From positions 62,001 through 126,000 of the forward strand of contig NW_003314398.1 in NCBI RefSeq assembly GCF_000143415.4: DNA of 64,000 nucleotides. The letters run 5' to 3'. Position 1 is the first letter of the stretch; each line of letters begins with the position of its first letter. Source of the stretch: Selaginella moellendorffii. Lineage: Eukaryota > Plantae > Lycopodiophyta. The translations under genes and the position numbers were made by a program. A model generated the notes under the pieces. That model was not told the origin of the DNA. It made no database searches and saw only the letters and a program-made list of their open reading frames with translations. Of this stretch, positions 38,369 to 57,432 are shown in pieces.

Positions 38369-38644
38369 GATCTTTCAGAGCAGTGAATGGTCGTCGAGCT
38401 TAAAGCAGGTTGCTCACTAGTGGGAGGTGATGACAGATGCAAGGAATCAGTCAGGCCACCGCGAAGTCAACTTTCCCGGAAGGAAAAAAAGATTTCTCGG
38501 CATAGTACGTCAACGAGGTACATGTTTTTCGTCTATTATCAGTGGCCTGCTGACGCTCTACGTGACTCTTGCATGCAAACGCAATCGCTCAAAAACATTT
38601 TCCGGAAAGCAGCAATCAATACCTTGAATGATTTGCGTCGTCTC

Positions 38645-40147
38645 TCAAATCTGCGCACCCCAGACATCTTGCCTGGCTTTTAGTCGCCAGCCTTTGAGCT
38701 CGCTGCCCTCGATGCTGCTGATGGATGGAGCGATGTCCGAGCCTTGGGGAACTCTCACCCGAGCAACGAGCTTCTGCCGGGCCTTGAAAAGCGACACGGG
38801 TTCTCTCACTCCGAGCTGCTTCAGGTGCTGCTGGAGCTCCTCCTCCGTGACCGTCGGGTTGAGCTCCGAGATGAAGATGGTGGGATCGCTGTCGGCGTCG
38901 TCGCGTTTCAGAGGTGGCGGCCGAGTTTGAGCCGGGGACAGCTTCACAAGCTTGCCAGTCTCCTTTTCAATCTTGTTCTTGACATCTCGCACGGCTCCCA
39001 GTTCGTAGAGCCGCTCTAGCGTTAGCTTGTCCCAAAGGATCTCTGGAATAGAAGTAGCGGTGAGGATCTTGTTCGTAAGTTTGTGGAGTTATAACACACC
39101 TGTTGGCTTTGGGAGGCTCGTTCCTGTGAAGATGATTCTTGTTGGCGTGCATATAACATCCACAGGAACGTCGTGTTTTGCCATGAGCTCGATTGGCATG
39201 TCACTTACGAGTTGCTTATCGTCCACTGCGAGCGAGAAAAGAGAGAAAGAAAAGAATAAGAACAAGCTCGCGATGAATGGAACTTAGTATTTACCTGTAG
39301 TCACCACCAGCGTTTTCTCGTTTATTTTCATGCGTCGAAGAAGCACGTATTCCATGTCTTCCAGGCCCTGTTATCCAATTCTCAGTATCAAGAACATTTC
39401 ACTTTCGAAAAAGCTTTCTTACGTCGCCTTTGCCAATCCTTGCACCAGTTTGAGGATCAACAGCAACGGAGCCCACCACAATGAAGTTGACAATGACGAA
39501 TTCATCCATTTTCATGTCCCTCCCGAAATTTACAAACTCTGGGAACACTCGGGTTAGAGCCGAGTCGATCACATTGCAAAAAAGGAAGCCTTACTTCCTT
39601 TCATGCACGCCTCTGCTATCTGCGTGGTAGTCATGGCCGCGGGGTTGATCATCCTGAAAGTACCAGTTTGCAAGTGAGGAATAAGAACACTCTTCTTTGC
39701 TGCGACGTAAATGTAAGTCTTCGAATGCCATGGTTTTCTACGAGCCCGGTACCTCGCAGTAGCATGGTTCTCACGGGCTTGAGAACCGTGTCGGATCCTA
39801 CGCAAACGCAAAAAGAATCACGATACTCGGGCAATTTCCTCGAGAGCTGTGAGCCAACAATCAAAGAAGAAAAACTAAGAGTTGAACGACGTAGAAACGA
39901 GGAAAGGATCGTCACTTACCGTGTACGCAGCCACATTTGCACCACGGAAGACGGGATATCGATTCCTTGGCACTGTGCTCACGCCCGATTCGCACAAGCT
40001 CCACACTTTCTTCCTCACAGCCCATTTCCAAGCGGCCTCACCGGATTCCGCCAATGCAGCTACATCGGAGCTCGATCGCGAGCTTGCCAGTCGATTCCAG
40101 CACGCCAACGCCGCCCGCCGAGCCCTGGAGCGCAGCGCAGCTTCCAT
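38645..40147 (-). CDS. COG0212/MTHFSD-like protein A with C-terminal RRM-like domain
   Basis: Spliced translation: [10 protein letters not shown]...[19 protein letters not shown]...[12 protein letters not shown]...PKP...ILWDKL, then [19 protein letters not shown]...LKGWRLKA. Confidence 0.88.
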
Positions 40148-40157
40148 CGCTCACCAT

Positions 40158-40187
40158 AAACCCTAGATACCCGCCATAAACCCTAAA
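40158..40187. promoter_or_regulatory. Two telo-box motifs (AAACCCTA) in the 48-bp gap between divergent ATGs
   Basis: CCATAAACCCTAG...CCATAAACCCTAA. Confidence 0.6.
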
Positions 40188-40195
40188 ATTTCCAA

Positions 40196-41759
40196 ATGCT
40201 GGGGAGGAAGCTCCGGGCGCCGCTCCCTCGCATTCTCTGGACGAGGAGCTCATCGTCCTCGAGCTCCTCCTCCTCGAGCTCCTCTTTCGAGCCCCATGAC
40301 GCTTGGAAATGGCTGATCCGGCAGCAAGTCTGGGACACATTCCGGATGAAACAGCGCCGATTTCCAGTGTTTGACGATCCCCAGGCGGCGGCGGAGAAGG
40401 TTTGTTCGTAGATTTTGATTTCTTTGCGGCTCATCTCTTCCATCCAGGTCCGAAAGCTCCCGGAATTTCAAGAAGCTCAGTGCGTGTATGTGAGCCCCGA
40501 TGCTCCACAAAGGCCAATGCGAGCGATGGTATTAACAAGTATTACGTGGGACTGCTCGATGGTTTCCTTTGTTCGCTCTCGCAGAGAGCAAAGCTTACGA
40601 AGCTCTCTCTTGGTTTGCAGACCAGAAAAAGCTTCTCGTCTCGCGATTGCCAAAGGGATTGTTCACGATGATGGATCCTGTTCACTTGTCCGATTTCGAC
40701 ACGATGAAAGCCTTGGAGCAACCAGGTGCGTGCTGCGATTTTCGGTGTGAGTTTGATCAAATGAGAAGTATGATCCTTTTATCCTGCAGAGTTTAAGATG
40801 GATGGCATCCCGATTGGACTCGACGCAAGAATGAGAGTCCAACTCTTGGTCACTGGCTCTGTTGCTGTTGATCCAAAAACTGGAGCTCGTCTCGGCAAAG
40901 GCGAGGTAAGCTACTATCCATGGATCTTCCAAAGGAAAAAAAATCTTTTCTTTCTCTTCAGGGCTACTTTGACATGGAATACGCAATTCTTCGTCATCTC
41001 AACATTGTCAACGAATCAACGTTAGTGGTTACTACAGGCGAGTGGCCGCTTTCCTTTCCTTGAAGTTTTTCAATCGATCTATCTAAAATTCCGATTTTTT
41101 TCCTTAGTGCACGATGACCAGCTTGTGATTGATCTTCCGGAAGACAAGCTCCTCAAGTACGATGTTCCAGTGGATGTTATATGCACCCCAAAGAGGACCA
41201 TCTACACCCAGACTAAAATCCCAAAGCCAAGTGATGGTAACGTGACAAATCTCCTCACTACCGTTGTCACTCTTTGATTTTTTTTCTGCAAGGTATTCTA
41301 TGGGAGTGTTTGCCACGCCATATGCTCAGCAAGATGCCCGTCCTGCGAGAGCTCAAAGACGCAGTCGAGAAGAAGCGAGAGGCCGCTGTGGAAATGGCTG
41401 CAAAGACAGATCCACCGCTCATTGCTCCCATCGAGACTGGACCCGCGATTTTCATCAAAAGCCTCAATCCCACTCTCACGGAGCAGGAGCTCAAGTCACA
41501 TTTGGAGCAGCATGGATTAGCGGCGGAGGAGCTGTCGCTCTACAGGACCGGAACCGGGAAAAACGTTGCTCGAGCAGTGATAGCCCAAGGCACGGACGTG
41601 GAGAAATGCGTCACCGCGATCGACAACACAAAGCTCAAAGGCTGGATCATGAGAGCCAGGAGGGATAAACACACCAAGGAAGAGGAGCCACCTCCAGACC
41701 CGGCTATGGTGGCTCGGCAAGCAGCGGCTCAAAGGATCCGAGGCACGCGTTTCTTCTAA
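40196..41759 (+). CDS. COG0212/MTHFSD-like protein B with C-terminal RRM-like domain
   Basis: [49 protein letters not shown], then [19 protein letters not shown]...LKGWIMRA. Intron positions match A; one GC donor. Confidence 0.88.
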
Positions 41760-41942
41760 GCAAGTCGAAGATATCTATTTGGATCGTCGTCCTCATCATC
41801 GCAGGGATTCACAGCGATCGGAGACGTGAAAGAATGGATGAGCTATGGAAGCTATCATGATCGTCCTCCTTGGTGGAAGGCGTTTCTTTTCGGCCTTGAT
41901 CTTGCTTGGCAGCGTGGTTTTCTTGTCCCAGCCGCTCTCCAA
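41756..41942 (-). pseudogene. Eroded copy of the small ORF at 55548-55766
   Basis: Colinear with 55548-55766 but with internal deletions and the ATG lost. Confidence 0.6.
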
Positions 41943-42079
41943 TTTTTTCTAACACTACAATGTGCTCCTCTTGCTTCTTCTCGGAGGAATTCTCCTTTTT
42001 GACACGCTTTTATACTTACAATCTCGCGGGGAAGACAGTCAAAATACGTTTTTTTTAAAACTAGGTCGGATAAATCTTA

Positions 42080-42226
42080 GGCGTGAGGATCTTGTCGCCG
42101 CGGGGAGAGATCAGGCGGGCGCTACCAGCATTGTTGTCTATTTCCAGAATTTTTGCCGTGAGCAGGCCTCGAGCGCTGGGGACGCCTGGAAGTGGACAAT
42201 AAGGAAGAAGGTTCTGGAATTGGTCG
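42080..42226 (+). pseudogene. Truncated 5' fragment of MTHFSD paralogue C
   Basis: [12 protein letters not shown]; close match to 55919-56078 and ends abruptly at the island junction. Confidence 0.85.
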
Positions 42227-42925
42227 TGCAATTGAACTACCATTGAACTACCAGCTTACGCTATTCATTTAGACACATTCTCTATCAGAAGTATGGAAGA
42301 TTTTTTCTTTAAAAACAGCATCCCTCTCATGGTTGTCACTTGCTCTCCTTCTCTAGTGTCTATTCTTGTCGCCATGAAAGCTGCAAATGCAGTGCCAATC
42401 ATAAATGCTCCAATGAACTTCTCCCTTGGATTCAACATCAGTTTGGCTGTGACATCGAAAAGAGAGTTATCAAGGCTAAAAGATCAATCATGTAAATCAT
42501 TTTCTCATTTTCTCTTCTTGCAGAGCTAATTTGTAACAAAGTGTTTATCTTTTTGCTCTTACTTCATTCTTTCTCTAATGGCAATAGAGCAAGATAGAGC
42601 AAAGGCAAAATCTGCCACTGTTCCTACCCTCTATATGACACTGCTTTAAATTGGTTTCTTCTTGCTCCTAAAAAGGTTTGGGGTGTGATTTCATCACTCT
42701 TTGCAAAAGAAGCATAACTCTTGAAGAACCCAAAAGTTTTTTGGCTAGCCCAATTTAACAAAATCGCAAATCTTGTGAATTGCTATATACGGGTCATGTA
42801 TCATTAATGTTATTTGAAGTAGATCTTGGTCCTTTTGCTTATTTAGACTCATTGCTTTATGTATTACTATAAATCTAAATATTGCTCTAGTATATGTTGC
42901 TATCGTCTAGATTGATGAGAATGCA

Positions 42926-44385
42926 GTGGATTTTTCAAGCAATCTACTGAGGGATATTCCCCATCGATGTGGACCTGCCATATGGTTCTTGGCCTTCGTA
43001 CTCATTTTTAGAGGATACAGCCTGATAGGTCTTATGGCCTTGGAGTCGGCGAGGCAAGAGCAAGTCAGCAGTATCAATGATGAGGACTCTTTGTGGGTAT
43101 GGACGCAGGAGCCTGTGATTCATCTGAATCAGCTGCATGGGATCCTTGTGCTGTGGTGCTCACCTGCCTATGCACCTCTGCCGCTGTTGAACATCATGTG
43201 TCCTGTTGATAGCTTCGTGGTGGTGAATTGGCAAGGATTTGAGACAGGTTTCCAAGAATGGTGGGCATCTCACCATACTGATCCTGTGAAAGGTGTAAAA
43301 GACGTGCAAGTGTTTAAGCATAAGTTGCTAAACATGTCTTTAAAGTATACTAACATAGTTTTATGAATTATTATTTATCCTTTCCTTCCATGGGAAAGGA
43401 TTTTTAGGATGTTTAATTGGGCATCCAGAATTATCCATCAATGATTCTTCAAATAAGCATATGCACTTCAAAGTTATTAAAGTTTTAAAACTTATTTTTG
43501 TTAGGCAATGGATGGGCTTACTCATCATTGAAAGTCCTATTCATCAGTGTTACAGGCAATGGCAACTGGAACACGTACCCATTCACTAAGCTCTAGGTTT
43601 ATATAATCTTTGGCAACATTGCCTTTAGTGTGGTAGCATTCAATGATAATTGGCTGGCCTTGTGCATGCAAGACGATACACTGCTCAAGGCTCATATCAC
43701 TTTTCGGGAGCATGCACAGATGCTATTGAAGCTGGGGTATCTCATCAAACTGGCCAGAAACAACATTCCTCCACTCGAAGCTCAACAAGCTCGAACACTG
43801 TGGAAGCCAGTTTGTGGCGGAGTTTCTCGTCTCAATGTGAGATGGGAGTTGCCAAGCTGAGACACATGGCCACGAAGTTCGAGTTTTTGGACGTGGGCAG
43901 CTTGCAGGGGATGGTAGCACTTCACTCCTCGTCCTGCATGGTTCGAGCAGCTTGGAAGGGCAAGCCAGTGGTGCTCAAGCTGAGAGACCTGACCCTGTCC
44001 GATCGCTTGGAGGAGGAGCTGCAAGACGATCTGGGAAGCATACATGTACATGAGACTGCAGAAGCTCCAAGGGTCGGTGCATCCCTGTGCTCTACTCTTC
44101 CATGGGGGGATGTTCTCCTTCCTCATGATGTCCGACGCTAGAGTTGGGGACGTGCTGCTCCCGGACCCTACGTGCCCACCAGAAGCTGCCATAGCTGCAG
44201 CGCAGAGATGCAGGGAAGCTGTGAGCGGTATGCACAACCGGGGAATTCTCCATGGGGACCTTGTGTTTACCAACGTGGCCGTCTTGCGGAGGCCCAGTGG
44301 AGGCTATGCTGGCATGCTGGTGGGATTCTCGCAGGCCAGGCTTGTTGGCCCGGGAGAGCAGCGGCATCTGCTGTCCAAGGAGTGA
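42926..44385 (+). pseudogene. Crinkler/CR-type REase + atypical kinase remnant
   Basis: WKGKPVVLK, RLQKLQG..P, MHNRGILHGDLVFTNV, degenerate (D)F motif. Upstream YIIFGNIAFSVVAFNDNWLAL...LKLGYLIKLA segment. Frameshifts present. Confidence 0.6.
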
Positions 44386-44611
44386 CTTCATCTGGAAAGC
44401 ATGCTCAGGGTTTTGCTACCAAAGGTGGAAGAGGACGTGGTGGTTTACTACAAATGAGGAGAAGGTGAGTACCATTCGCTGCTTCTCACTTTGCTTATTT
44501 TTTCTTTCGGAGACACGTCCAGATCGTCTATGACTAGTTGAAAGTACAAGTAGTAGCTACTTTGACGCATTGAATACATTGTAGCTGCAAATGCATTTCA
44601 TACAATAAGAA

Positions 44612-45925
44612 AGATATGCAACTTGTGTGCTTGTGTGATTCGAAGCAAGGAATAAACAATCCAAGTACCTAGTGCAGAAAACAATGAGCTACTTCACCAC
44701 CACTGTCCTCCCTCTATGCATCACTTGCAAACTTGGTGGCTTCAAAAGAAAGAAAGGTTTTTCTCTGGGATTGCATTGGAACTAATTTGGCAAGAAAGGG
44801 AGGCAAAATGGATGTTTCTGCATAGTGTTCAGGCCTTCTTTGCCCAACCACAAAGCCCCTTGTCATCTTTCTAGTAATATTTGTTGGCATAAGGTTTTTT
44901 ATATTTCTGATATTTCTTTTTTATCCTTTTCAGAAACCAAAACAATTAAACTCACGAGTTTAAAATATTTTAAATAGAAACTTAAAGAGAAAATATATAA
45001 AAACTCAACAAAACAAACTAAGCAGCATGTTTAGTTTGTTTGTTGATTTCTGGTTTGCTTAAGCGTGGATTGAGATGGTAGTGGATATACCTAGAATATT
45101 CTTGAACATTTTGGGATATTCTGGGAAATTCTACAATCTAATGGTTATTATTCATTTAGATTAATCTTGTATTTATAATTTATAAACTTTATTAAACACT
45201 TTCTAGTATATTCTAGTTTATTCTACCATCTAATGGTTCATAGGCAATAAGATAAATCTTATGTTTATAAATTATAAAGATGTTTATAATTATAAATTTC
45301 CATTTGATCAATTGGATTAATAAATAAGAATAACACTACTATTCAGAAAACTAAGCATTACTGCATGGAATGTGTAGAAAATTATTTATATATTTTCTCT
45401 TTTAAGTTCAAATTATTTATATATTTTCTTTTTTAAGTTCATCATCATCATCAGCATCATACTCATATCATTAAACAATAACTCTAATTTCGTCACATAT
45501 TCTCTATTTGAAAAGTTACAACCTTCCATAATTATATTAGATCTTGGCATATGCCCAGAATATTAATCTCCAGCATATAGAAGGTCCAGCTCTGCTGGAA
45601 AGCATATTTCTCACTCAGACCAAAGGTATGCAATTTGTATGTTTTTGTGATTCAAAGTGAGGAATAAGAAATCCAAGAACCTAGTGCAGAAAATAATGAG
45701 CTACTTTGCCACTGCTGTCCCCCCTCTATGCATCACTTGCATTCTTAGTTCTTACTTTGTTCTCCTACATAGATTATGAGTTGGATCTTATACAGCTTTA
45801 ATTGAAAGAAAGGTTTTTCTCTCAAGATGTTTATAGAATCTGGCATTCCATTCGAACTAATTTGGCAAGGGAGGCAAAATGGATTAAAAATGGCCTACTG
45901 TGTCTTTCTCCATAGGCCTTCTTTG
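44612..45925 (+). repeat. Diverged direct repeat (about 44612-44842 and 45624-45925)
   Basis: Shared ATCCAAG.ACCTAGTGCAGAAAA.AATGAGCTACTT...CTCTATGCATCACTTGCA and GAACTAATTTGGCAAG blocks. Confidence 0.85.
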
Positions 45926-46056
45926 TGGGGCACACTTAATGCGTATGCAGGTATTTTATTAGAAAGGAATTTAATATTTGAAAGCATCTCTATTGCATCT
46001 ATTTAAATTAAAGAATATTTCATAAAAGATTTAAAATAGCAAGGTCCAGGTTAATT

Positions 46057-46222
46057 TGGTTTTAATCTGGACCATTCATTTATATATATGGGCTAATTGA
46101 ATATGCATTTTTTGTATTCTATGCACTCACATTAGTAGAGGTTGGTAAAGGTCAAAGACAACTTTGATTGCTGTATTTGGATTTATGCTTTTGTTTAGAT
46201 TTAACTTTTATATTGTCTATAT
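46057..46222 (+). mobile_element. Eroded LTR+PBS+leader fragment of the 976-7554 gypsy family
   Basis: GGCTAATTGA.TATGCATTTTTTGTATTC...CACTCACATT.GT.GAGG...TTTAGAT matches 1048-1240. Confidence 0.7.
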
Positions 46223-46488
46223 CTTTTTTTGTTCTTGTATCTTTTCCACATGGCTAAGCAACCATGTAAGTTAATCTCAAGAGTATATTAAGGCATGAAT
46301 TTAGGGTAAGGGATTTAACCTACCTTAAAGGCTCAACCAGATTGTGAAAAACCTCAAGATGAGATGTAATATAGAGGCTAAAACTTTTTGTCTTTGTTAT
46401 TTAGTGCCACATCATAACATTTAATGTAGGCAAGTAGATTTCACTTCATCAATCTCACCCTCTTCTTGAAATTGCATCACCCTAGAAG

Positions 46489-46792
46489 GGTGCAATGAAC
46501 AAACTTGTCACTCAAACCACGTGACATGGAATCTTTAACATGTCAGCTTGGCAATGCTTCCCTGATCTCTCTTTGACATAGCTTGATTGCTCTCTACTTG
46601 CTAATGGCAGCCTCACAATGCAAAACAAACACTTGCACATGACCTAACCTTGCAACGCACTACAAATGCTAACACAAGATCTCCAAGCGCACTCACCCCA
46701 AGGTACTTGGGACATTAATAGAAAAACTCTTGCTATTCAAAAAAAAAATTGACGTCCACAGAACAAATGTGAGTACATTTCAATCCAAGCCA
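46489..46792. repeat. Inverted-repeat arm paired with 51127-51418
   Basis: TTGTCACTCAA.CCAC.TGA.ATGGAAT.TTTAACATGTCA...TTGCTCTCTACTTGCTAATGG is present as reverse complement at 51.3-51.4 kb. Confidence 0.85.
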
Positions 46793-46795
46793 CAC

Positions 46796-46914
46796 TCAAG
46801 ATGCTCATAAGCAACAAAGCACTCTGTACTCTAGAGCATGCTCTAGGAAACACTTCTAAACGCAAAATCCTCAAGGGGTGGGGTGATGCTTGGCTTAACC
46901 CTTGCTCCCTATTA
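46796..46914 (+). repeat. Direct repeat with 52846-52964 (PPT-like GGGGTGGGG, 16-bp palindrome)
   Basis: TCAAGATGCT.ATAAGCAA...CTCTAGAGCATG.TCTA.GAAACACT...GCTTAACC...CCCTATTA in both places. Confidence 0.85.
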
Positions 46915-47074
46915 TTTTTTGCTTTTATTCTCCAACTCCAAGATTCTACATCAGATCTTTTATATGTCTGGTTTGCCCTAACCCCATATATCTTGTCCCA
47001 AAGTCCCGGACTGTGGAAAGGAAGAGGAGTAGTCCTTTGGTATAGCAACCAAAGATATGGTCACACGGTGAAGA

Positions 47075-48865
47075 ACAAAATCCTCTACATCTCCACCACC
47101 TCATAAGCCCTAATCCACATCACCACCCTAACCACCTCTTTGATCATGAGTTTAATCCTTCACAAGTTTATACAATATAAATGTACCAGTCTTGACCCCA
47201 ATAAGAATGTAATTTGCATCCTTACATATTAGTGGATTCCCTTCTAGAATCTCCCCTAGTACACCTCCAACCTTGTCACCTAAAGTCTCGATAAAAGGAT
47301 TCCCCTCTAGAATCTCCCCTAGTACACCTCCAGTCCTGTTACCTAAAGTCTCAATAGAAGGATTCCCCTTTGGAATTTCCATTACTACACTAATCTCAGC
47401 TTTATGAACCCTGTGTAAGCGACTAAATTTTCCATTCTACTTTAGTCACTTAACCACACCTCTGACCACTTGGTCTTATTCACAACTTCCATAAGTCTTG
47501 TTCTGGAGACTTATTAGCCCTGTGAATGGCTCTATACCACTCAGCCTCTGCACTTGGTCCAAATGCTCCACATGTCCAATCCCCTAATTGACACCCAAAT
47601 GTACTACTGATATATTAGTCTGTTACGCTAAGGCCATGCCTATTCACCCTTGTCACATTGGTAGTCTAAGACCACCCGCATCACAGTCCCGTCTCTCAGA
47701 AATTGGGATATTTGTCCATGAGTGGTCATCCTTTGACCACACTTTAGCACCCTTAAAATGCTTAGAGACATAAGGAACACTTTTCCCTAATGTCCCTTCT
47801 TTCATTCCCATTAAATCCCTCTCCATCCATGGTTGGGCTCACTAACACTACCACTTGGTCAAAGCCAAAATGCTCAACCACTAAGTCTTATTGACCTTTG
47901 GGACTTCTTTACCATGTGATTGTATCCTTGGTCATTATATCAAAGGATTATTACTTTTCCTTTCCATAGTCTAGGACTTTGGGATGACATTTCAAAACAC
48001 CATTGCCCTATATAAGCTTTGTGGGTACTTTCTTCATCTTCCACCTTTAGATGCCTTAGCCATGTGGCTAAAACAAGGTTTTGATGAGCCACACAAGGTA
48101 TCCAAGTAGGTAGTGCCACCCACGTTTGGATTGGGAGTATCGACTATTCAATTTCCTGGGGGAGTTAGAGCTGGTTCTTGAATATTTCACCAAGTTACCC
48201 CACTTGTTTGTCCATATTCACTCTAACTTTAGACTCCTTAGTGGATATATCATCACCCAACACGTGGGTATAGATTTCCTTCGTCACACTAGCATTTCCT
48301 GGCCAAATTGGCTCCACTAAAGTCTTCCCCCTATTATACTTTTGGAGCTCACCAAACCCCCCAGGGTTTGGGAGATAATCGCTTTGGGCTTTCACCCTTA
48401 GACTTGGACTCAAACTTAGACTCAGACTTGGTCTTGGTCTCGGTTTCAATTTTGGTGCCGATGTCAGTCTCGACCTCAGACTCCATCTCAAGTCCATTTC
48501 GAACTCGACTTGGGACTCTATTTTGGGTCCATCTTGGACTCCATCTCGGGTCCATTTCAGACTCCAATCTCGGGCTCTTTCTCGGACTCTATCTCAGATT
48601 CTTTTTCGGACTCGTTCCTGACACTTCCATGTGTCACGACACTTGCCATGTATCAATCCTTCTTGTGTCTCTTTTTAGGGACTTATTCATTGATTGCTTC
48701 ATGTTCATCCCTTAAACACTTCATTCGAAGTTCCACTCCCACTTTTGACTTTCCAAGTCAGAGCCTTTGGTCCAAATATATTATGTTTGTTAGACTTCTG
48801 CTTTGACCACTATTATGTGGCATCTTTTTGGCTCCACTTTGGGGCTAAGGGATTTATGTCTCACA
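47075..48865 (-). mobile_element. Second, older copy of the VNTR-containing LTR-like element
   Basis: Reverse complement starts TGTGAGACA and is colinear with 2988-4771 down to 47447. It has an extra ~60-bp tandem repeat at about 47234-47375. Confidence 0.85.
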
Positions 48866-50380
48866 CCCTGGAACTAGTTCACAGGAAACCACCTTTGAAG
48901 GATTCTTCAGAATTGCATCCACAACTCTTGTTACTTGGACATGATCCCCTACTATGTTCTCTACTATTGCATGCTCGGTTTTTATCTTTGGCCCCTTGTG
49001 CACTAATCCTAGCCTCAATGGCCACCACTTAAAACCTATCCAAACTTCCCTCACTCATGGATTGTTCATTGGCATTTTCACCACTTGGCCCCTTATCATC
49101 TAATTAAGCATCAATCTCCTCAACCTGTGTCATAATCTTAGAAACAAAGAAGGTATAAGCATCAAGCAATGCCTTCTTAGTGCCTTCCATGGCTTTCTTC
49201 ATCTCTAGAAGCCTTCCTTAAGCATCTTCATTATTGATGCCAACACTCATTCTTAGTTACTTCCTTCCTTTTATTATACTTAATTTCTGCATAAATACCT
49301 AAAGAAGCATCTTTGTCTCTAATATTTGCCTCTCAAACTCCCATGTTCCCTTCACCAGTAGCTCAGTTTGATGCTCTGCAGTGAACACCTTCTCAATCTA
49401 GGCATCACATACTTGCCTAACTTTCTGAGATTCCCTCACTTGAACTGCTGATTCCTTGATCTTCTGCTCTAACTCACTAATGCATGCATGCAAGCGATCT
49501 TCATTATGAGCCTCTACCTGGTCAAGATGATTCTTCACCTGCCCATTTTCCACTAGTAACTCAAAGATGACATCTTTTTGGTATCTTATATTTGCATGAG
49601 ATGCTTCTACTAGCATATGGGTTCCATATATCCATGTAAGAGGGTAGTCCTTATCCATTCCCCACACCTATAATCTATACTTCTCTAAGATCTGTTGAAT
49701 TCTAGCTTTCACTAGCTTCTAGATAATTGCATCCTATGTCAAAATCCCAACATGTCCCATATTCCCCCACAATTGGGAAAACCACTTATCAAGGAACTCA
49801 AACTAGTTAACAATCTTTCATGCTATCTACTATAAGACATCTTGGCATACCCGATGGTAGAACTGCATAGTCAAAGGAATCCCTATCGTAGCTCCTCCAT
49901 GAGCATCCTCCCATAAAGACAACCATTGCCTTACATAACTTTTCCATCTCAAGGCTATTATAGCGATCACATACATCCACTACAAAAATCTTTTGACTCT
50001 ACCTGGGTGAAGATCTCCCTAACCTTGACTTTTAGTCCATCCTTAAAGGTAAGTGGTGTAACCTGGGTGAGTAGGGTTGCCATGATTATCAACCCTACAA
50101 CCTATGGCCAAATTTGGATCCCTCAGATGGGATATCAGCAAATCGCTGTGAGATTCTTATAAAGGATTTCACATTTTGCCAACAACCTTTGCAAAATCAT
50201 GATCTTCTACATAAAAGGATCCATCATTGAGTATTGCAAGATCAATAAGATCCCCATAGCCAATCACTAGTTTTGTGCTATATGTCATCTTTTTTTTCTC
50301 ACTTTTTTTCTCCTTATTTTTTTTCTCTCTCTCTCTCTTTCTCTCACTTTTTATTTTGCATCTATTTTAATAGAAAATTG

Positions 50381-50910
50381 CATTTTTCATGAAGAAATTA
50401 ATCGACTAAAGTGGTGGTGTCCGACGAAATAACAAATGCTTAAAATGTGATGGCAACCAATGGCCTTAAGATTATCCAATGAACCAACAACATCCGACCA
50501 TCAATCATGTTGTATATATTGAAGAAGGTAATGTAGAGCAAACTGAGACAACAATAGAAGATTTTACTCTAGGATCTTTAGATTTAGATGCTGGAGAAGA
50601 AAATGCTATTGAGATATCCAAATTGCAACAAAATAAATAAATAAGTGAAAGAAAGAGAGATTCTATTGCAATCTAGATATCCCAATAATATCTTCTTCTT
50701 TAGCATCCAAATCCAAAAATCTTGTAGTAGAATCTTCCATTGTTGTCTCAGTTTGCTCTACATTACCTTCTTCAATATATATAGTATGATTGGTGGCCAG
50801 ATGTTGGTTTATTAGACAATTTCGAGCCCATTAATTGCCATCACATTTTAAGCACTTGTTATTTCGTCGGACACCACCACCTTAGTCGGTTAATTTCCTC
50901 CCTAAAAATG
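50381..50910. repeat. Long foldback: ~250-bp arms and a 25-nt loop
   Basis: 50381-50634 is the reverse complement of 50660-50910, e.g. GTGGTGGTGTCCGACGAAATAACAA / TTGTTATTTCGTCGGACACCACCAC. Confidence 0.95.
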
Positions 50911-51539
50911 TGAGTTGATGATCTACCTTTGTGAATTGATTCTTCAATTCTTGTGCTAATGTTATTATAAATTCTTTTACATCTATCCATATATCATTTT
51001 TTACTTGCTCTTTCAATGCTCCATTCTTTTCATTAAGATTCAATATTATGAATCTCTACTGTATCCTCAAAGTGCAATATTGTAGTTCAAACTTATGTGC
51101 TTGGTGTATAAGATTAGGGTAGTTGATGGCTTGGATTGAAGTGTGCGCATGTTTGTTTTATGAATGTGGGTTCTTTTGTTTAAACAATAAATATGTTTCT
51201 ATCAATATCTCGAGTACCTTGGAGTGAGTGTGTCTGGAAATCTTATGTTGGCATTTATAGTGTATTGCGAGGCAAGGTCATGTGTAGCTTGTTTCACATC
51301 ATGAGGCCACCATTAGCAAGTAGAGAGCAACCAAAGAGAGATTAGGGAAGCATTATCAGGTTGACATGTTAAATATTCCATATCATGTGGCTTGAGTGAC
51401 AAATTTATTTATTGCACCTTTGTTATCAAAGGATTTTGTGTGACAATTCTTGTATATGGGGAGAGAATTAGATTTTAAAGTGTAAATTTCTTTTGTTGAT
51501 TTTTAACCCAATACCATTGTAGCATCTTCTTGAAAAGTT

Positions 51540-52800
51540 GAATGTAGGAAGATAGCCAATGGTGGATTTAGTTTAAAACCGGATGAATCTTTTGCAAAGG
51601 TTAAGAAGTGGAATTGGGTTGGTATTGTTAAGGAGGAGGAGTGCACCCAAGGAAAGACACAAGTGGTAGCATCTCCAGCTAATGCTAAAGGAAAAAATGC
51701 TCAAGAGGGTGGTGTGGGTATATCTGAAGTTCAAGAGCGAGGAGGACATGCCCAAGATCAAGAAAAAGGGAAAGAGCAAGTTTTCTTTGAGTATGAGATT
51801 TTGTAGGAGGATCAAAATTAGGATAGGCCAAGACTTGGGTGGTGAGGTGGTGGTGATAAATCTTTCTGAGATAGCTTCACATTTTTCTACTAAGGAAGAC
51901 CTTATTTCGGACGTAGGTGGGAAAGATTCTCACCATTCTTTAGAGGAGCTCAAGGTCAAGATGGCACCTTCAACATACTCGAAGTTCCTTTCAACTATGC
52001 CATGAATCTCGATGAAATGGTTTATCTCATGTGCAATCTATGAATGTCAGTGGATTCTGACAGTTTAGGTGAGAATCTTCACGATCCTCGCCACAAAGTG
52101 ATTTAACAAGTTCAAGAAATGAGGAAGAATGAGGTGGCTACTATCCAAGATTGACATATAGTGGTTTTGTAATTGCAGGAAGTATTGCATGAGCCTATGT
52201 TGATATGGAAGAAGGGGAGATACTATAAAGGTATCTCGAGGCAATGATGGAGGAACTAATGTTATGGTCAGACTATACTGAATAGGTATCTAAGTGTCTA
52301 CCAAGCCAAGGACTTGCATGTCTCTGCAATTTACAATAATATGTTTGGCTTGACTATAGCTCATAGGCTGACAATACCCCCACCTCAAATCTTCTGGGGA
52401 ATGCCCAATTTTCAACTTCCAAGGTAGAAAGATTCAAGCATTTCCAGGAAGTTTAAACTTCTAGCTTTCAAAGGAGATAACCTTGATGAGAATCAAGATT
52501 AGCTTGCCACATTGTTCACAAACAAAGAAGTAAATAGATGGATTGATTATGGTACTTTGCTTTGGGCTGGGATTACTATGGCACAAGGGTTTACTAGGTT
52601 TGATGGAACTTTAATAAGGAGGAATTCTTTATCAATTTAAAGGGACTTGTAGTAAGCTTAAATTGGTTTGAGGTGAAGTTTGGCAAAAGATTTTTAAGTC
52701 TAAATAGAAGTCAACTATTAAACAAGCTATGAGCTAGAAAGCAAAGAAAAAAACTTGCAATATAATTTAGACCTTCACTAGTGATGGATTGGCAATTGCA
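51540..52800 (+). mobile_element. Highly decayed gag-like retroelement remnant
   Basis: Broken frames such as KLLAFKGDNLDENQD..NRWID, lying between repeat segments that resemble retroelement UTR and PPT. Confidence 0.4.
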
Positions 52801-53580
52801 CAAGTATTTTTGCTAGGGCCTCAAAAACAATCAAATGAAGCATATTCAAGATGCTTATAAGCAATAAAACACTTTTTACTCTAGAGCATGTTCTAAGAAA
52901 CACTGTTAAATGTAGAATCCTTGAGGGGTGGGGTAAGGCTTAGCTTAACCATCATTCCCTATTACTTCCCATTCGTGTCCAGAACTGAAGAACAATTAAT
53001 AAAAGAAAAAAATGGCCAATCTTTTAATGAAGATATTAAGAAGTTGCAACATTTGCAGCATGAAGAACCTTAATAGAAGGCATAACATAATCTAGGAAAC
53101 TAAATCTTTGTCCTTTAGCGCCAGGTCATATAACTTATTTTCCAACTCTGAGACATGCCTACAACTCTGCCACCTCACAAGCCTTTAACAACCTCTTTGA
53201 TCGATCCTTCACAAGTTTGTGTGGTACACACTTCTACACCTACAGCCAGCGACCAATCTGGGAATTTAACATTCTCATTTAAGTTGTTACCACAACAAGT
53301 TCTTCCTCCATATCACCTCTAAACTCACATGTCCCTTCCATGTGGTTATTCAGCTCGAACTGATAAATCAAGTAAACCAGAACAACTCAAATTTTTTTGA
53401 TAAACAAATATTGACAAGTGATACCAACTCTGGCACACATCACACCCTTCAGACTGCCCACATTTTAGACAGGCTCCTTCCTCTTCTCCAAATACTGGTT
53501 GCCCCTGCTCTGCAGCAAGCCCCATATCTTCCATCACCTCCTCCAACTTCAGGCGATAATGATGAACAGCATCTGCTGTC

Positions 53581-54660
53581 TCAGGTCGAGGGAGAACCAG
53601 ATGATGCCAATGCTTCCAAGTTCTCCGTTGAATAAGAGACCCGCCCTTTAGGTGTACGCAAAACATTCCCACTTTCATCCTTCAAAGGTACCTTGAGCTT
53701 GATATACGGCATCTGAGAGCTGCCTTCTGGAGTGACTACTAGGAAGATAGGCTCCTTCCCACAAAGCAGTCTGCACTTGTAAGCCAACGAATCATAATCG
53801 GACTTCACATGAGCGACTTACTCTTGGAGGAAGTTACTTGAAGCAGATACTCAAACTCACCACCAAACGCATCCACGAGGGGATAGTTCTGGCTCGGAGT
53901 AAGAACATACTTGTCCATGTCCATGGTGGTAAAAGGGAAGCTGTTGCCATAGTGATGCTTGATTCTTGCTGGTGGAAGGGTGATCGTGCTACCATCGGCC
54001 AACGGGAACTTCCCTCCTCTACTTAGAATGGAATGAGCGAAGTCGTCAAAGACACCTCTAGCGGCTGCAGCAAGTGTTGGAATGAACTTGGTTTTGCTGA
54101 CGAGCTCCAGTCACTTATTCAGCTGGGACTGATAAAAGACCTCAGGCACCACGAGGAGACAAACTCCACTCCACAAATGTGCTTCATGTCATGGTCGGGT
54201 ACCTCGAAACACTTGCCACTAGGATCGAAATAATAGAAGTAGGAGTGTTCTAGTGCCACCAGCTGCACTACAACCCTTCTCGCGTAGCCGTGAAACAAAG
54301 TACCACAAACAACATGACTTGCCGATGCCCGGATTGCCAGAGATGTGAGTGAACGTGTACTCCGAGTTGAAAACCTTGTGAAACAAGGTTTTCAAGGGCG
54401 AATATAAATCGCCCTCTTGTCACTAAACTTACAGGGCACATTCAGGAGTCAGTCCCCCCCAAGGAATGAGCTTCGATAGCTCCTTCTCCAGTTCCATCTC
54501 CTTCAATAAGAGAAGCTTCTTCCTGCGCAGCAGCAGCTTGTACTTTCCCAGCTGGCTCCCTTTTTCCAGCAGAGTCTGCTGCTCCTTGGCATCCGTTGTT
54601 GACTAGTGCTTCTTGGGCTTCTTTGATCTTCCCTTCGACGATGGAAACCGGAGACGCCAT
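53581..54660 (-). pseudogene. Crinkler/CR-type coiled-coil header + P-loop NTPase + REase remnant
   Basis: Translated by hand: IYIRP..., ISGNPGIGKSCCLWYF (Walker A), GVFDDFAHSILSRGG, PSQNYPLVDAF...LLQVTSS. Frameshifts and an internal deletion. Confidence 0.75.
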
Positions 54661-54897
54661 ACCTTAGGAGCTCGTCTTCGACGACGATCCAAAACCAAAA
54701 AGGAAATCATCCAAAAATCTGTTGTGTAGCGCAGTAGCAAGAAGCTGCGATTGTAGGCTGGATCAACAGTATTTGATTCATCTAAAACATGAAAAATCGT
54801 AGCACGCATCCAAGGCTTTCATCGTCTCAAAGTGAACACACCATAGCCATGGCAACAACCAGAAGAAGACACATGAGGCTGATCCAGCCACAGAAAC

Positions 54898-55551
54898 GAG
54901 CTCGTCTTAGGTCCGTGGATCTTTCAAAGGGAAAAAATCTTTTCTGACATGGATCTTCGTCATGTCAACGACAAGCTCGATGTTCCAGTGGATGTTATAT
55001 GCACCCCAAAGAGGACCATCTACACCCAGACTAAAATCCCAAAGCCAAGTGATGATAACGTGACAACTCTTCTCACTACTGTTGTCACTCTTTGATTTTT
55101 TTTCTGCAAGGTATTCTATGGGAGTGTGCCACGCCTTATGCTCAGCAAGATGCCCGTCCTGCGAGAGCTCAATGACGCAGTCGAGAAGAAGCGAGAGGCC
55201 GCTGTGGAAATGGCTCCAAAGACAGATCCACCGCTCATAGCTCCCACCCGCGATTTTCATCAAAAGCCTCAATCCCGTTCTCACGGAGCAGGAGCTCAAG
55301 TCACTTGGAGCAGCATGGATTAGCGCCGGAGGAGCTGTCGCTCTACAGGACTGGAACCGGGTAAAACGTTGCTCGAGCAGTGATAGGACGTGGAGAAATG
55401 CGTCAACGCGATCGACAACACAAAGCTCAAAGGCTGGATCATGAAAGCCAGGAGGGATAAATACACCAAGGAAGAGGAGCCACCTCCAGACCCGTGTATG
55501 GTGGCTCAGCAAGTAGCGGCTCAAAGGATCCGAGGCACGCGTTTCTTCTAA
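54898..55551 (+). pseudogene. Deletion-riddled duplicate of the 3' half of MTHFSD-B
   Basis: Colinear with 40883-41759, with many short deletions. Confidence 0.92.
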
Positions 55552-55766
55552 GCAAGTCGAAGATATCTACTTGGATCGTCGTCCTCGTCCTCGCAGGGAT
55601 TCACAGCAGTGTTGCGGTGGTCGAAGACGTGAAAGAATGGATGAGCTATGGAAGCTATCAACGATACGAGAGCTTCCTTCTTGATCGTCCTCCTTGGTGG
55701 AAGGCGTTTCTTTTCGGCCTTGATCTTGCTTGGCAGCGTGGTTTTCTTGTCCCAGCCGCTCTCCAT
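55548..55766 (-). CDS. Small 72-aa protein with LPPRRxxKK motif
   Basis: Intact ORF with TATAAAAG about 75 bp upstream; resembles plant small proteins carrying LPPKRGxIK. Confidence 0.55.
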   Translation of the reverse strand: MESGWDKKTTLPSKIKAEKKRLPPRRTIKKEALVSLIASIAHPFFHVFDHRNTAVNPCEDEDDDPSRYLRLA

Positions 55767-55915
55767 TGGGAATTTTTTCTAGCACTCCAATGGGCTCCTC
55801 GTCCTTGCTTGGATTTCTCCTTAGAAATTTGACACTCTTTTATACTTCCAATAAGTCCCCGCGTTATTTTTTAAAACTAGGTCCCTTTAGGGCTTTAGGA
55901 AGGGTTCTTGGAGAG

Positions 55916-57432
55916 ATGCGCGTCAGGATCTCGTCGCCGCGCGGAGAGACTAGGCGGGCGCTACCGGCATTGTTGACGATTTCCAGAAATTTTTCCGGGA
56001 GGAGGCCAAGATCAGAGAGGCCGAGCGCCGAGGACGCCTGGAAGTGGACAATCCGGAAGAAGGTTTGGGATTTGGTCGCGGGCCAGAGGGTCGTCAAGAG
56101 TCCCAAGAACAGGACTCCAAACTTCGAAGGCGCAGCGATCGCAGCGCACAAGGTTTGTGAGTTGTGAATCGAGATGACTTGGTTCTCTTCTCTTATTTTT
56201 TTCCCCCCTTTGTGCTCTTGAGCTAGGAGAGCTATCTGCATTTCGCGATGCCAAAGTCGTCAACGTTGGCCCAGAGGTCGCGCAGGCACCCGTGAGGCTG
56301 ATGACTCTGAGAGGTAAGAATCTTACAACCATAGCAAACTAAAAGCCACTACTCCTTTTTATCCTTTGCAGAGAGGAAGAAGCTTATTGTTCCTTGTCTC
56401 AGAAGGCTTGTCAAGGAATTCCTGGCCGAGGTCGATCCAAACGACATGACTCAAGAAGAGTTGGATGCTCTCACAGACGAAGGTAGTCTCGCTCTTCTCT
56501 CGAAGATCTTTAACTGCGGTGCGTGTAGAGCTTGGACTTCCAACTAAACCTTTGCAGCTCAGTCCAAAGGCAGCATTTGAGGTGGACCTCGTTGTTCTGG
56601 GATCCGTGGCTGTCGATCCAAAAACTGGAGCTCGTATCGGTGACGGCCAGGTGAAAAAAAAAAAAAAACAGAAAGAGAGAAAATGCAATGTCAACTTTAC
56701 CTCTTTCAGGGCCTGGAGGACTTGAATTACGCATTGCTTCGCTACATGGAAGCCATAGACAGCTCAACCCCGGTGGTCACAACAGGTTTGCATTTGTGTT
56801 CGTTTTACGAAAAAGCAACTAGCATTTGTCCCAGTTCACGAGAAGCAGCTTGTGGATGATATCCCAGTGGAGAAGATGATGTGCTACGACGTTCCAGCGG
56901 ATATAATCTGCACGCCTGAGAGGACCATCTTCACCAGCAGAAGCTTTCTCAAGCCAGATGGTAACGAGAAACTCATTTCTCCTCGTTAGCAACTTTGCGA
57001 TCTACAGGAATTTTCTGGGAAAGCTTGCAACCAGAAAAGCTCAGCCGAATCCATGCTCTCCAAATGCTGAAAAAATCGCTCCAGAAGGAAATGCGACTCC
57101 CGATGGCTCCGTCACTCTCACTCGCAAAGCTCAAGCGCTCCTCCATCATCGACGAGCCTTGCATTTTCCTGTCGGAGCTCTGCCCGAGCGTCACCGAGAG
57201 GCAGCTCCAGCGGCACTTGGAGGACCTGGGGGTGAGAGCTCGCAAGGTTTTGGTGTTTAAAGCCAGCAGGAAGATCGTTGCTCGGGCTATGGTGGACGAG
57301 GAGAAGATTGATGCTTACGTGAAAGCTATCAACGCGAGCACGAGACAGCTCGATGGGTGGTCGATAAGAGCGAGAAGAGACTCCTCGGCGATTCGAACCA
57401 AAGCGCGAGAGAAAGAACCTCTTGGCGATTGA
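55916..57432 (+). CDS. COG0212/MTHFSD-like protein C with C-terminal RRM-like domain
   Basis: [56 protein letters not shown], then [19 protein letters not shown]...LDGWSIRA. Confidence 0.88.

What the first reader, a model, noticed from the sequence alone, without database searches (positions are those of the whole stretch)
38645..57432. Expanded family of putative mitochondrial COG0212/MTHFSD-RRM proteins with eroded enzyme motifs
Seen: three intact paralogues with shared intron positions but strong divergence. Each has an Arg/Ser/Leu/Ala-rich, acid-poor N-terminus ([11 protein letters not shown].., [19 protein letters not shown].., [13 protein letters not shown]) and a ~75-aa RRM-like tail (IFIxxLxPxxTExELxxHL...ARxx...LxGWxxxA). 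Family motifs are altered: KVNPDxPQ becomes [16 protein letters not shown] or NVGPEVAQ, and GKGEGF/Y becomes GKGDGL or GDGQGL. Known: Arabidopsis COG0212 is a single, plastid-targeted 5-FCL paralogue without an RRM, while animal MTHFSD carries a C-terminal RRM and binds RNA. Inference: a lineage-specific set of organellar RNA-binding pseudo-enzymes, possibly acting together in editing, splicing or translation in a heavily edited mitochondrion.
Basis: partly seen in the sequence, partly recalled or inferred. Interest (0 to 1): 0.78.

Follow-up and report, generated by a model that had tools for sequence, protein, structure and literature searches.

The report
Fast-evolving spikemoss MTHFSD/COG0212 gene cluster
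Three intact neighbouring Selaginella genes, at least two of them expressed, are fast-evolving copies of the poorly understood COG0212/MTHFSD protein; they kept its ancient RNA-binding-type tail, while a separate well-conserved copy lost it, so this is an ordinary gene-family expansion with a neat split of domains and not a new kind of protein.

Summary
The window (Selaginella moellendorffii) carries three intact 7-exon genes: A (minus strand, 379 aa), B and C (plus strand, 395 aa each). Each has a 5-formyltetrahydrofolate-cycloligase-like domain (PF01812), a helical linker and a C-terminal RRM. Intron phases are identical. All 12 introns of A and B are spliced exactly as modelled in RNA-derived contigs from four studies. 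NCBI already names the A, C and allelic B products 'COG0212'.

- **RRM not new:** long RRM-bearing forms occur in Chara, mosses, ferns and Diphasiastrum, and the two-domain layout matches animal MTHFSD.
- **Other copies:** Selaginella also has a canonical copy E, which keeps 99% of family-conserved positions and has no RRM. A fourth divergent RRM copy, D, lies about 860 kb away on the other haplotype's scaffold.
- **Origin:** A-D form one clade sister to E, on branches roughly ten times longer. They keep only 63-69% of conserved positions.
- **Still constrained:** the WKW..R helix, the G-R-G-G-G loop and the DVPVD-CTP motif stay invariant, and allelic dN/dS is 0.39. 'Pseudo-enzyme' is therefore not shown.

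Mitochondrial targeting and a role in RNA editing remain untested. The scan noted the same family on the other haplotype (s1-431214).

The parts
38645..40147 (-). Gene A: COG0212/MTHFSD-like paralogue, 379 aa. Exons 40147-39920, 39846-39753, 39699-39595, 39538-39423, 39367-39295, 39225-39100, 39042-38645. The RRM lies in the last exon.
   Evidence: Model. Product identical to XP_024521984.1. All 6 introns spliced in contigs of 4 runs. On the allelic product P0002: PF01812 5e-19, RRM_1 20.1 bits.
38568..38622 (-). 55-nt GT-AG intron in the 3' UTR of gene A, starting 22 nt after the stop codon.
   Evidence: Loose ends at 38623 in all four runs match window 38542-38567 when read against the sequence.
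40148..40195 (.). 48-bp spacer between the divergently transcribed start codons of A and B, holding two AAACCCTA (telo-box-like) motifs at 40158 and 40178.
   Evidence: RNA contigs of A reach 40166 and those of B start by 40206.
40196..41759 (+). Gene B: paralogue, 395 aa. Exons 40196-40399, 40448-40538, 40621-40725, 40790-40905, 40962-41037, 41108-41236, 41293-41759. Intron 5 is GC-AG. B keeps GKGEGY.
   Evidence: Model. All 6 introns spliced in RNA contigs. The allele on the other haplotype is XP_024533234.1. On that allelic product P0001: PF01812 1.2e-21, RRM_1 22.9 bits.
41154..42226 (+). Copy 1 of a duplicated 1.1-kb B-3'/C-5' junction: intact B exons 6-7 followed by a decayed C-like exon 1 (about 42070-42246).
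   Evidence: 83% identical to 54972-56078. Compared with the other haplotype, its B part is 99-100% identical and its C part 69-86%.
42227..54971 (.). 12.7-kb block between B and C that is absent from the other haplotype, where B and C lie about 356 bp apart.
   Evidence: No informative Pfam hit apart from a P-loop fragment.
54972..56078 (+). Copy 2 of the duplicated junction: decayed B-like exons 6-7 (54949-55551, with frameshifts) followed by the intact start of C.
55916..57432 (+). Gene C: paralogue, 395 aa. Exons 55916-56152, 56223-56313, 56372-56482, 56529-56650, 56710-56785, 56835-56960, 57008-57432. It is the most altered in the glycine loop (GDGQGL).
   Evidence: Model. Product identical to XP_024521970.1. 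PF01812 3.6e-21. AF2 pLDDT 83.6 with 5-FCL fold matches. Tail is an RRM fold. Expression not tested here.
57773..58585 (+). Two decayed C-like exon 6-7 fragments downstream of C (about 57773-58112 and 58178-58585).
   Evidence: Self-blastn and tblastn; ORF fragments.

Best explanation
A, B and C, together with a fourth copy D about 860 kb away on the other haplotype's scaffold, are functional, fast-evolving paralogues of the eukaryotic COG0212/MTHFSD family. That family combines a 5-FCL-fold domain, a helical linker and a C-terminal RRM. The copies arose by DNA-level duplications within the Selaginella lineage from an ancestor that already carried the RRM. After the first duplication the two lines split the ancestral parts. 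The canonical copy E kept the long plastid-type N-terminal region with the ERLRLD segment and the near-invariant pocket motifs, but its last exon now stops before the RRM. The A-D line kept the RRM, replaced the N-terminal region by a 34-41-residue basic presequence, and evolved roughly ten times faster. It still holds invariant the putative nucleotide/phosphate-binding core: the WKW..R helix, the G-x-R-x-G-x-G-x-G loop and DVPVDxICTP. Shown here: gene structures, expression and splicing of A and B, both folds, the phylogeny and ongoing purifying selection. Inferred: these proteins still bind a nucleotide-like ligand but have a remodelled substrate pocket. Also inferred: they carry the RRM-linked (RNA- or partner-binding) half of the ancestral function, probably inside an organelle and more likely the mitochondrion. 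What that function is remains unknown for the whole family.
For: Gene models, identical phases and exon lengths across A-E. RNA splicing of all introns of A and B in four studies. PF01812 at 1e-19 to 1e-21. The 5-FCL crystal structures 2jcb, 1ydm, 1sou, 1wkc and 3hxt are the top fold matches for C. RRM fold for C's tail and RRM profile hits down to 5e-12. The tails align with those of Chara, mosses, ferns and Diphasiastrum. The full model aligns over residues 38-385 with a chordate MTHFSD cluster. Tree: A-D form a clade (100/97) sister to Selaginella E (100/97), with end branches of 1.8-2.1 against 0.26; each copy alone is still sister to E. Of 134 family-conserved columns, A-D keep 63-69% and E keeps 99%, yet the glycine loop and the WKW and CTP motifs are invariant. 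Allelic dN/dS is 0.39 pooled, exon divergence is lower than intron divergence (p=7e-5), and allelic indels are whole codons. There is no RRM remnant downstream of E.
Against: RNP1 of the RRM lacks the usual aromatic residues (KxVARxxV), so RNA binding may be atypical or absent. Pfam does not detect the RRM in C by sequence. Allelic dN/dS of 0.45-0.60 for B and C rests on few changes and allows considerable relaxation. Long branches make the internal order of A-D unsafe. Expression of C and D was not tested. No orthologues from other Selaginella species were recovered, so the age of the expansion rests only on saturated dS (1.4-2.6).
Confidence: 0.7

Rival explanations
1. One reading: A, B and C are mitochondrial RNA-binding pseudo-enzymes that lost catalysis and act together in RNA editing, splicing or translation of the heavily edited Selaginella mitochondrion.
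For: Short Arg/Ser-rich, acid-poor N-termini; C (SRNF|S) and D (SRGF|C) resemble R-3 processing sites. RRM fold. Strong loss of family-conserved residues. Organelle RRM proteins are known editing factors in flowering plants (PMC4402546).
Against: No localisation predictor or experiment was available. The RRM is the ancestral MTHFSD tail and not an ORRM-type domain. The nucleotide-binding core is invariant. The parent family has no known catalysis to lose (PMC3223725, PMC4120688). Nothing links the genes to editing. Ferns and Diphasiastrum made similar duplicates independently.
Confidence: 0.12
2. A-D are still small-molecule enzymes or ligand-binding proteins of the COG0212 type (thiamin- or folate-related damage control) with shifted substrate specificity. 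In this reading the RRM serves as a regulatory or protein-docking module and not as an RNA binder.
For: Invariant WKW..R, glycine loop and DVPVDxICTP. Changes concentrate in motifs outside that core (KVNPDxPQ, HHRIPNF, PQPRLRTGFFS). RNP1 lacks aromatic residues in the whole plant family. COG0212 is associated with thiamin metabolism (PMC3223725, PMC4120688).
Against: The assignment of core versus pocket residues rests on recalled 5-FCL structures and was not tested here. Human MTHFSD is reported as an RNA-binding stress-granule protein (cited in PMC5773659). Replacement of about a third of near-invariant positions would be unusual for a conserved enzyme.
Confidence: 0.2
3. A-D are redundant duplicates under relaxed constraint that are drifting towards pseudogenes, as the neighbouring B-like and C-like fragments already have.
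For: Branches roughly ten times longer than E's. Allelic dN/dS 0.45-0.60 for B and C. Several decayed fragments in the same locus.
Against: Open reading frames and splice sites are intact in both haplotypes, and indels are whole codons. A and B are transcribed and correctly spliced in four studies. Pooled dN/dS is 0.39 and exons are less diverged than introns. Paralogue dS is saturated while the frames stay intact. The core motifs are invariant.
Confidence: 0.06

Closest known systems
Plant COG0212 (5-formyltetrahydrofolate cycloligase-like protein; Arabidopsis At1g76730)
   Same: Same Pfam domain PF01812 and the same 5-FCL fold. A-D sit inside the plant COG0212 clade. They share the 7-exon structure of Selaginella's canonical copy. 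NCBI already gives them this name.
   Different: A-D keep only 63-69% of positions that are at least 93% conserved from Chlamydomonas to angiosperms. They lack the long N-terminal region with the AERLRLDAEAR segment. They carry an RRM, which the seed-plant proteins sampled and Selaginella's canonical copy lack.
Animal MTHFSD (methenyltetrahydrofolate synthetase domain containing)
   Same: Same two-domain layout: 5-FCL-like domain, helical linker and C-terminal RRM. The nearest Atlas clusters by sequence features and by shape are chordate MTHFSD.
   Different: A-D branch within streptophyte COG0212, so the shared layout is ancestral and not a special link to animals. They have basic N-terminal presequences. 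RNP1 has no aromatic residues. No animal sequence was placed in the tree here.
RRM-bearing long COG0212 forms of Chara, mosses, ferns and Diphasiastrum
   Same: Homologous linker and RRM tail, with the shared pattern IF.W/S.L ... H ... G ... AR ... L.G..R... Independent duplications producing one more divergent copy also occurred in ferns and Diphasiastrum.
   Different: Nearly all of those proteins keep the canonical motifs (GKGEGFA[ED]LEY in nearly all). In Selaginella the canonical motifs and the RRM have been separated onto different genes, and the RRM line expanded to four very divergent copies.
5-formyltetrahydrofolate cycloligase proper (MTHFS/YgfA, EC 6.3.3.2)
   Same: Same fold (TM by target 0.60-0.73 to 2jcb, 1ydm, 1sou, 1wkc and 3hxt) and a glycine-rich loop in the equivalent place.
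   Different: 15-20% identity only. No PDB 5-FCL chain was reached by sequence profile. The COG0212 branch is reported to lack 5-FCL activity (PMC3223725).

Membership tests
COG0212/MTHFSD family | PF01812 (5-FTHF_cyc-lig) domain above Pfam's gathering score | tested here: met
   69.4, 77.9 and 76.4 bits for the A allele (P0002), the B allele (P0001) and C (P0003), against a cut-off of 27.
COG0212/MTHFSD family | 5-FCL fold of the N-terminal domain | tested here: met
   AF2 model of C (pLDDT 83.6). The top 12 Foldseek PDB hits are 5-FCL/MTHFS structures, probability 1.0. Only C was modelled.
COG0212/MTHFSD family | Placement inside the family in a phylogeny | tested here: met
   A-D form a clade sister to Selaginella's canonical COG0212, nested among land-plant sequences.
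COG0212/MTHFSD family | Family signature motifs KVNPDxPQ and GKGEGFAELEY | tested here: not met
   A has CVGSDTVL / GKGDGLEDMEY, B has YVSPDAPQ / GKGEGYFDMEY, C has NVGPEVAQ / [11 protein letters not shown]. The glycine and arginine skeleton G-R-G-G-G is kept. These are conserved features of the family, not a formal definition.
COG0212/MTHFSD family | C-terminal RRM (long or MTHFSD-type form) | tested here: met
   RRM_1 22.9 bits for the B allele (P0001), 20.1 bits for the A allele (P0002; just under the 20.7 cut-off), none for C by Pfam. C's tail model matches only RRMs in PDB. The family tail profile hits RRM chains at 5e-12.
5-formyltetrahydrofolate cycloligase (EC 6.3.3.2) | ATP-dependent conversion of 5-formyl-THF to 5,10-methenyl-THF | not testable with these tools
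   The Arabidopsis COG0212 protein lacks this activity (PMC3223725). Nothing was measured for the Selaginella proteins.
Organelle RRM (ORRM) editing factors | RRM belonging to the ORRM clade and a demonstrated effect on organellar editing | not tested
   The tail aligns with MTHFSD/COG0212 tails of other plants. No comparison with ORRM proteins and no functional data.
Mitochondrial presequence proteins | Cleavable N-terminal targeting peptide and import into mitochondria | not testable with these tools
   Only composition is available: 34-41 aa before WKW, 5-8 Arg+Lys and 0-2 Asp+Glu in the first 30 residues, R-x-F motifs in C and D. No predictor was available.

The most novel reading that the evidence does not exclude
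After duplication in the Selaginella lineage, an ancestral two-function protein (small-molecule domain plus RRM) was split between genes. E kept the metabolite-facing pocket without the RRM. A-D became a small family of organelle-targeted, nucleotide-binding RRM proteins with a new RNA-linked role. That role could, for example, lie in handling the exceptionally heavily edited organellar transcripts. If so, this would be a natural separation-of-function experiment for the enigmatic MTHFSD family.
Probability: 0.15. Interest if true: 0.7.

Novelty: new member of a known kind. Interest (0 to 1): 0.36.

Why it matters
COG0212/MTHFSD is conserved across eukaryotes, yet no biochemical function is known for it. 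Plant work links it to thiamin metabolism, and human work reports an RNA-binding stress-granule protein. This locus adds two points. First, the RRM is ancestral in the green lineage: it is kept in Chara, mosses, ferns and lycophytes, and is missing from the seed-plant and liverwort proteins sampled. I found no paper stating this. Second, Selaginella has placed the near-invariant pocket motifs and the RRM on different genes. The RRM-bearing copies tolerated replacement of about a third of otherwise near-invariant residues, while a small core stayed fixed. That pattern tells experimenters which residues matter for the RRM-linked role and which for the other role. It also provides ready-made natural variants to test. 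Beyond that, this is an ordinary tandem gene-family expansion that public annotation already names.

Tried and rejected
- **Homology searches:** the word-indexed search with a profile of the divergent copies found no further divergent members and no orthologues from other Selaginella species. It did not even list A, C or D, so this blank is uninformative.
- **Tail-profile search:** the search of 1.84 billion representatives found only about 15 full tail relatives among 141 hits; the rest were generic RRM proteins.
- **PDB by sequence:** profiles reached only RRM chains. They did not reach 5-FCL structures or the human MTHFSD RRM entry.
- **Literature:** Pribat et al. 2011, the primary COG0212 paper, is not held. 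Its conclusions are cited second-hand from PMC3223725 and PMC4120688.
- **Paralogue dN/dS:** dS is saturated (1.4-2.6, with one undefined value). I do not rely on the resulting ratios of about 0.2-0.4.
- **The 12.7-kb inserted block:** a Pfam scan of its ORFs gave nothing but a weak P-loop fragment.
- **Rejected, long-branch attraction:** I considered that the A-D clade was such an artefact. Each copy alone still falls beside Selaginella E.
- **Rejected, hidden RRM isoform of E:** there is no RRM-like sequence downstream of E's stop, and the next gene starts about 140 bp later.
- **Not done:** mapping the diverged residues onto 5-FCL active-site residues. No reference sequence or coordinates could be handled by the tools, so the 'core versus pocket' assignment rests on recalled 5-FCL structures.
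Full report
**What is there**

The window comes from Selaginella moellendorffii, from a 352,132-bp scaffold. My models of A and C are letter-identical to XP_024521984.1 and XP_024521970.1. Starting from the ORF list and the raw sequence, I built three gene models and checked them by script.
- A lies on the minus strand, 40147-38645, and encodes 379 aa.
- B lies on the plus strand, 40196-41759, and encodes 395 aa.
- C lies on the plus strand, 55916-57432, and encodes 395 aa.

Each gene has seven exons with intron phases 0,1,1,0,1,1 and almost identical internal exon lengths (91-94, 105-111, 116-122, 73-76 and 126-129 nt). Introns are 46-82 nt long. Eleven of the twelve introns of A and B are GT-AG, and intron 5 of B is GC-AG.

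Contigs from four public runs belonging to four studies lack exactly these twelve introns, including the GC-AG one. A and B are therefore transcribed and spliced as modelled. The same contigs reveal a 55-nt intron in A's 3' UTR (38568-38622).

**Domains**

Exon pieces gave only weak Pfam hits. The full-length proteins scanned were the allelic A and B products (P0002, P0001) and C itself (P0003). They give PF01812 at 5e-19, 1.2e-21 and 3.6e-21. RRM_1 scores 20.1 bits for the A allele, just under the 20.7 cut-off, and 22.9 bits for the B allele. C gives no RRM_1 hit.

An AlphaFold model of C built on a 36-sequence alignment has a mean pLDDT of 83.6.
- Its N-terminal domain matches the crystal and NMR structures of 5-formyltetrahydrofolate cycloligases (2jcb, 1ydm, 1sou, 1wkc, 3hxt) with probability 1.0 and TM by target of 0.60-0.73.
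- Residues 306-378 form a beta-alpha-beta-beta-alpha-beta unit.
- A tail-only model (pLDDT 81) finds only RRM domains among its 50 best PDB matches.
- Family profiles hit RRM chains by sequence down to 5e-12.

One caveat applies. RNP1 reads K-x-V-A-R-x-x-V without the usual aromatic residues, as it does in most of the plant family. Canonical RNA binding should not be assumed.

**Relatives**

A profile of the three last exons, searched against 1.84 billion representatives, found the genes themselves and about 15 proteins that match over the whole linker plus tail. Cluster look-ups name them. They are Selaginella COG0212 paralogues, Ceratodon purpureus, Psilotum, Ceratopteris and Diphasiastrum.

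A search with the Psilotum protein shows a clear split.
- Ferns, mosses (Sphagnum, Ceratodon) and Chara braunii carry long forms that cover 85-92% of the query, including the tail.
- The seed-plant proteins listed (angiosperms and the conifers Wollemia and Araucaria) and the liverworts Marchantia and Riccia cover about 60-70%. The proteins examined end shortly after LPPTAQRR.

The tails of A-D align column by column with those of Chara, mosses, ferns and Diphasiastrum. The whole-protein model aligns over residues 38-385 with a chordate MTHFSD cluster.

The RRM is thus the ancestral state of the green-lineage family and the normal state in non-seed plants.

**The rest of the Selaginella family**

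There is a fourth divergent RRM-bearing copy, D (XP_024533035.1, 382 aa). It lies about 860 kb from the allelic A-C cluster on the other haplotype's scaffold.

There is also a canonical copy, E (P0278/P0279), on another scaffold. E has KVNPDTPQ and GKGEGFAELEYGM, a long N-terminal region with the conserved ERKRLDSEAR segment, and no RRM.

D and E have the same seven-exon, same-phase structure as A-C. The family therefore grew by DNA duplication. The RRM lies in the last exon, which in E simply ends early. No RRM remnant follows E's stop codon, and the next gene starts about 140 bp later.

**Phylogeny and rates**

In a maximum-likelihood tree of 38 sequences, A-D form a clade (100/97) that is sister to Selaginella E (100/97). 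It does not group with Diphasiastrum or with a fern paralogue. End branches are 1.8-2.1 changes per site for A-D against 0.26 for E. Because long branches attract, I rebuilt the tree with each of A-D alone; each again fell beside E.

Ferns and Diphasiastrum show their own independent duplications.

I then took the 134 alignment columns that are at least 93% identical in 30 canonical sequences from Chlamydomonas to angiosperms. The share of these columns retained is:

| Protein | Conserved columns kept |
|---|---|
| Selaginella E | 99% |
| Ceratopteris chr10 | 84% |
| Diphasiastrum chr17 | 76% |
| D | 69% |
| C | 65% |
| A | 63% |
| B | 63% |

However, the columns that stay invariant across all 36 aligned sequences are concentrated in three places: the WKW..R helix, GSVAVDP-TGAR-G-G-G...Y..LR, and D-P-D..CTP...KP..W. 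From what I recall of 5-FCL structures, these correspond to the ATP/phosphate site. I did not test that mapping.

**Selection**

The other haplotype (GL377584.1) carries alleles of A, B and C.

| Gene | Synonymous changes | Non-synonymous changes | Allelic dN/dS (NG86) |
|---|---|---|---|
| A | 5 | 3 | 0.19 |
| B | 3 | 6 | 0.60 |
| C | 5 | 10 | 0.45 |
| Pooled | 13 | 19 | 0.39 |

B and C each also carry one indel of a whole codon (three bases). Exons differ by 0.7-1.5% and introns by 1.9-5.2% (Fisher p = 7e-5). Between paralogues, dN is 0.43-0.59 and dS is saturated at 1.4-2.6. The duplications are therefore old, and the frames have been kept open for a long time.

Together with the expression data, this rules out simple decay. 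It does allow partly relaxed constraint.

**N-termini**

A-D have only 34-41 residues before the conserved WKW, against 50-300 in the other plant proteins examined (75 or more wherever the conserved ERLRLD-type segment is present). Their first 30 residues hold 5-8 Arg+Lys and 0-2 Asp+Glu. They lack the AERLRLDAEAR-type segment. C (SRNF|S) and D (SRGF|C) resemble R-3 processing sites.

This is compatible with a mitochondrial or dual-targeting presequence, but no predictor or experiment was available. One fern paralogue clade shows similar Arg-rich N-termini.

**Interpretation**

The best-supported account is a Selaginella-lineage duplication of an RRM-bearing COG0212/MTHFSD gene, followed by a partition of its parts.
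- E retains the strongly conserved pocket and the plastid-type N-terminal region, and has lost the RRM.
- The A-D line retains the RRM and the small invariant core, acquired a short basic presequence, and evolved roughly ten times faster.
- That line then expanded to four genes, three of them in this cluster.

What these proteins do is unknown, as it is for the whole family. The held literature says only three things. Arabidopsis COG0212 is not a 5-FCL and is associated with thiamin metabolism (PMC3223725, PMC4120688). Human MTHFSD is reported as an RNA-binding stress-granule protein (cited in PMC5773659). A survey of plant folate genes saw no domain besides PF01812 in 5-FCL proteins (PMC6451014). 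I found no paper describing RRM-bearing plant COG0212 proteins or the Selaginella expansion.

'Pseudo-enzyme' and 'editing factor' are therefore speculation. An organellar, nucleotide-binding, RRM-linked role is my preferred inference, at low confidence.

**Locus architecture**

A and B are head-to-head, with start codons 48 bp apart. Two AAACCCTA motifs lie in that spacer; the window holds 6 such motifs against 1.7 expected by chance.

On the other haplotype, B and C are about 356 bp apart. In the window, a 12.7-kb block lies between them. It is flanked by a duplicated 1.1-kb B-3'/C-5' junction whose redundant halves have decayed. The other haplotype's junction looks like copy 1 in its B part and like copy 2 in its C part. 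That is what a deletion by recombination between the two repeats would leave.

Two more decayed C-tail fragments follow C. An old gene model (SELMODRAFT_448813) fuses B's tail to unrelated sequence from this block.

**Verdict**

The genes are already annotated members of a known family. The modest new content is the ancestral status of the RRM in the green lineage and the domain partition between Selaginella paralogues. The scan's note s1-431214 describes the same family on the other haplotype.

Noticed in passing
window 41154-42226, 42227-54971, 54972-56078: Structural difference between haplotypes. A 12.7-kb block flanked by a duplicated 1.1-kb B-3'/C-5' junction (83% identical) separates B and C here, whereas on GL377584.1 B and C are about 356 bp apart. 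Each repeat copy keeps one intact half and one decayed half (69-96% identity to the other haplotype). The other haplotype's junction is a mosaic of the two intact halves, as expected from a deletion by recombination between the repeats.
   Followed up: partly
window 40148-40195: A and B are transcribed divergently with start codons only 48 bp apart. The spacer holds two AAACCCTA (telo-box-like) motifs. RNA contigs of A reach 40166 and those of B begin by 40206, so the two 5' ends nearly touch.
   Followed up: partly
window 38568-38622 (minus strand): A 55-nt GT-AG intron in the 3' UTR of gene A, 22 nt after the stop codon, spliced out in contigs of all four runs laid.
   Followed up: partly
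window 57773-58112 and 58178-58585: Two further decayed copies of C's exons 6-7 in tandem just downstream of C.
   Followed up: no
window 41293-44385 (protein P0004, SELMODRAFT_448813): An old public gene model fuses the RRM exon of B to unrelated sequence from the inserted block. No record gives the correct 395-aa B product on this scaffold.
   Followed up: partly
window 40509-40650: One contig of run X6 runs unspliced through intron 2 of B. This is intron retention, pre-mRNA or DNA carry-over.
   Followed up: no
L003:6001-7403 (canonical copy E): Isoform X1 of the canonical Selaginella COG0212 retains the 57-nt intron 2 in frame, adding 19 residues inside the 5-FCL-like domain (P0279 against P0278).
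   Followed up: no
L002:878-2884 and L003:1-170: PPR genes lie next to paralogue D and near canonical copy E. PPR genes are very numerous in this genome, so this is probably coincidence.
   Followed up: no
proteins P0168, P0019 (ferns) and P0157 (Diphasiastrum): Ferns and Diphasiastrum independently duplicated the RRM-bearing gene. One fern clade has Arg-rich, mitochondrial-looking N-termini, and Ceratopteris chr10 and Diphasiastrum chr17 also have altered GKGEG motifs (GTGKGF, GEGEGL). This parallels the Selaginella pattern in milder form.
   Followed up: partly
window 36866-38368 (minus strand): An intronless 500-aa aspartyl-protease (TAXi/Asp-type) gene lies directly downstream of A. One RNA contig (run X7) runs on about 1 kb beyond A's 3' end, towards this gene.
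   Followed up: no
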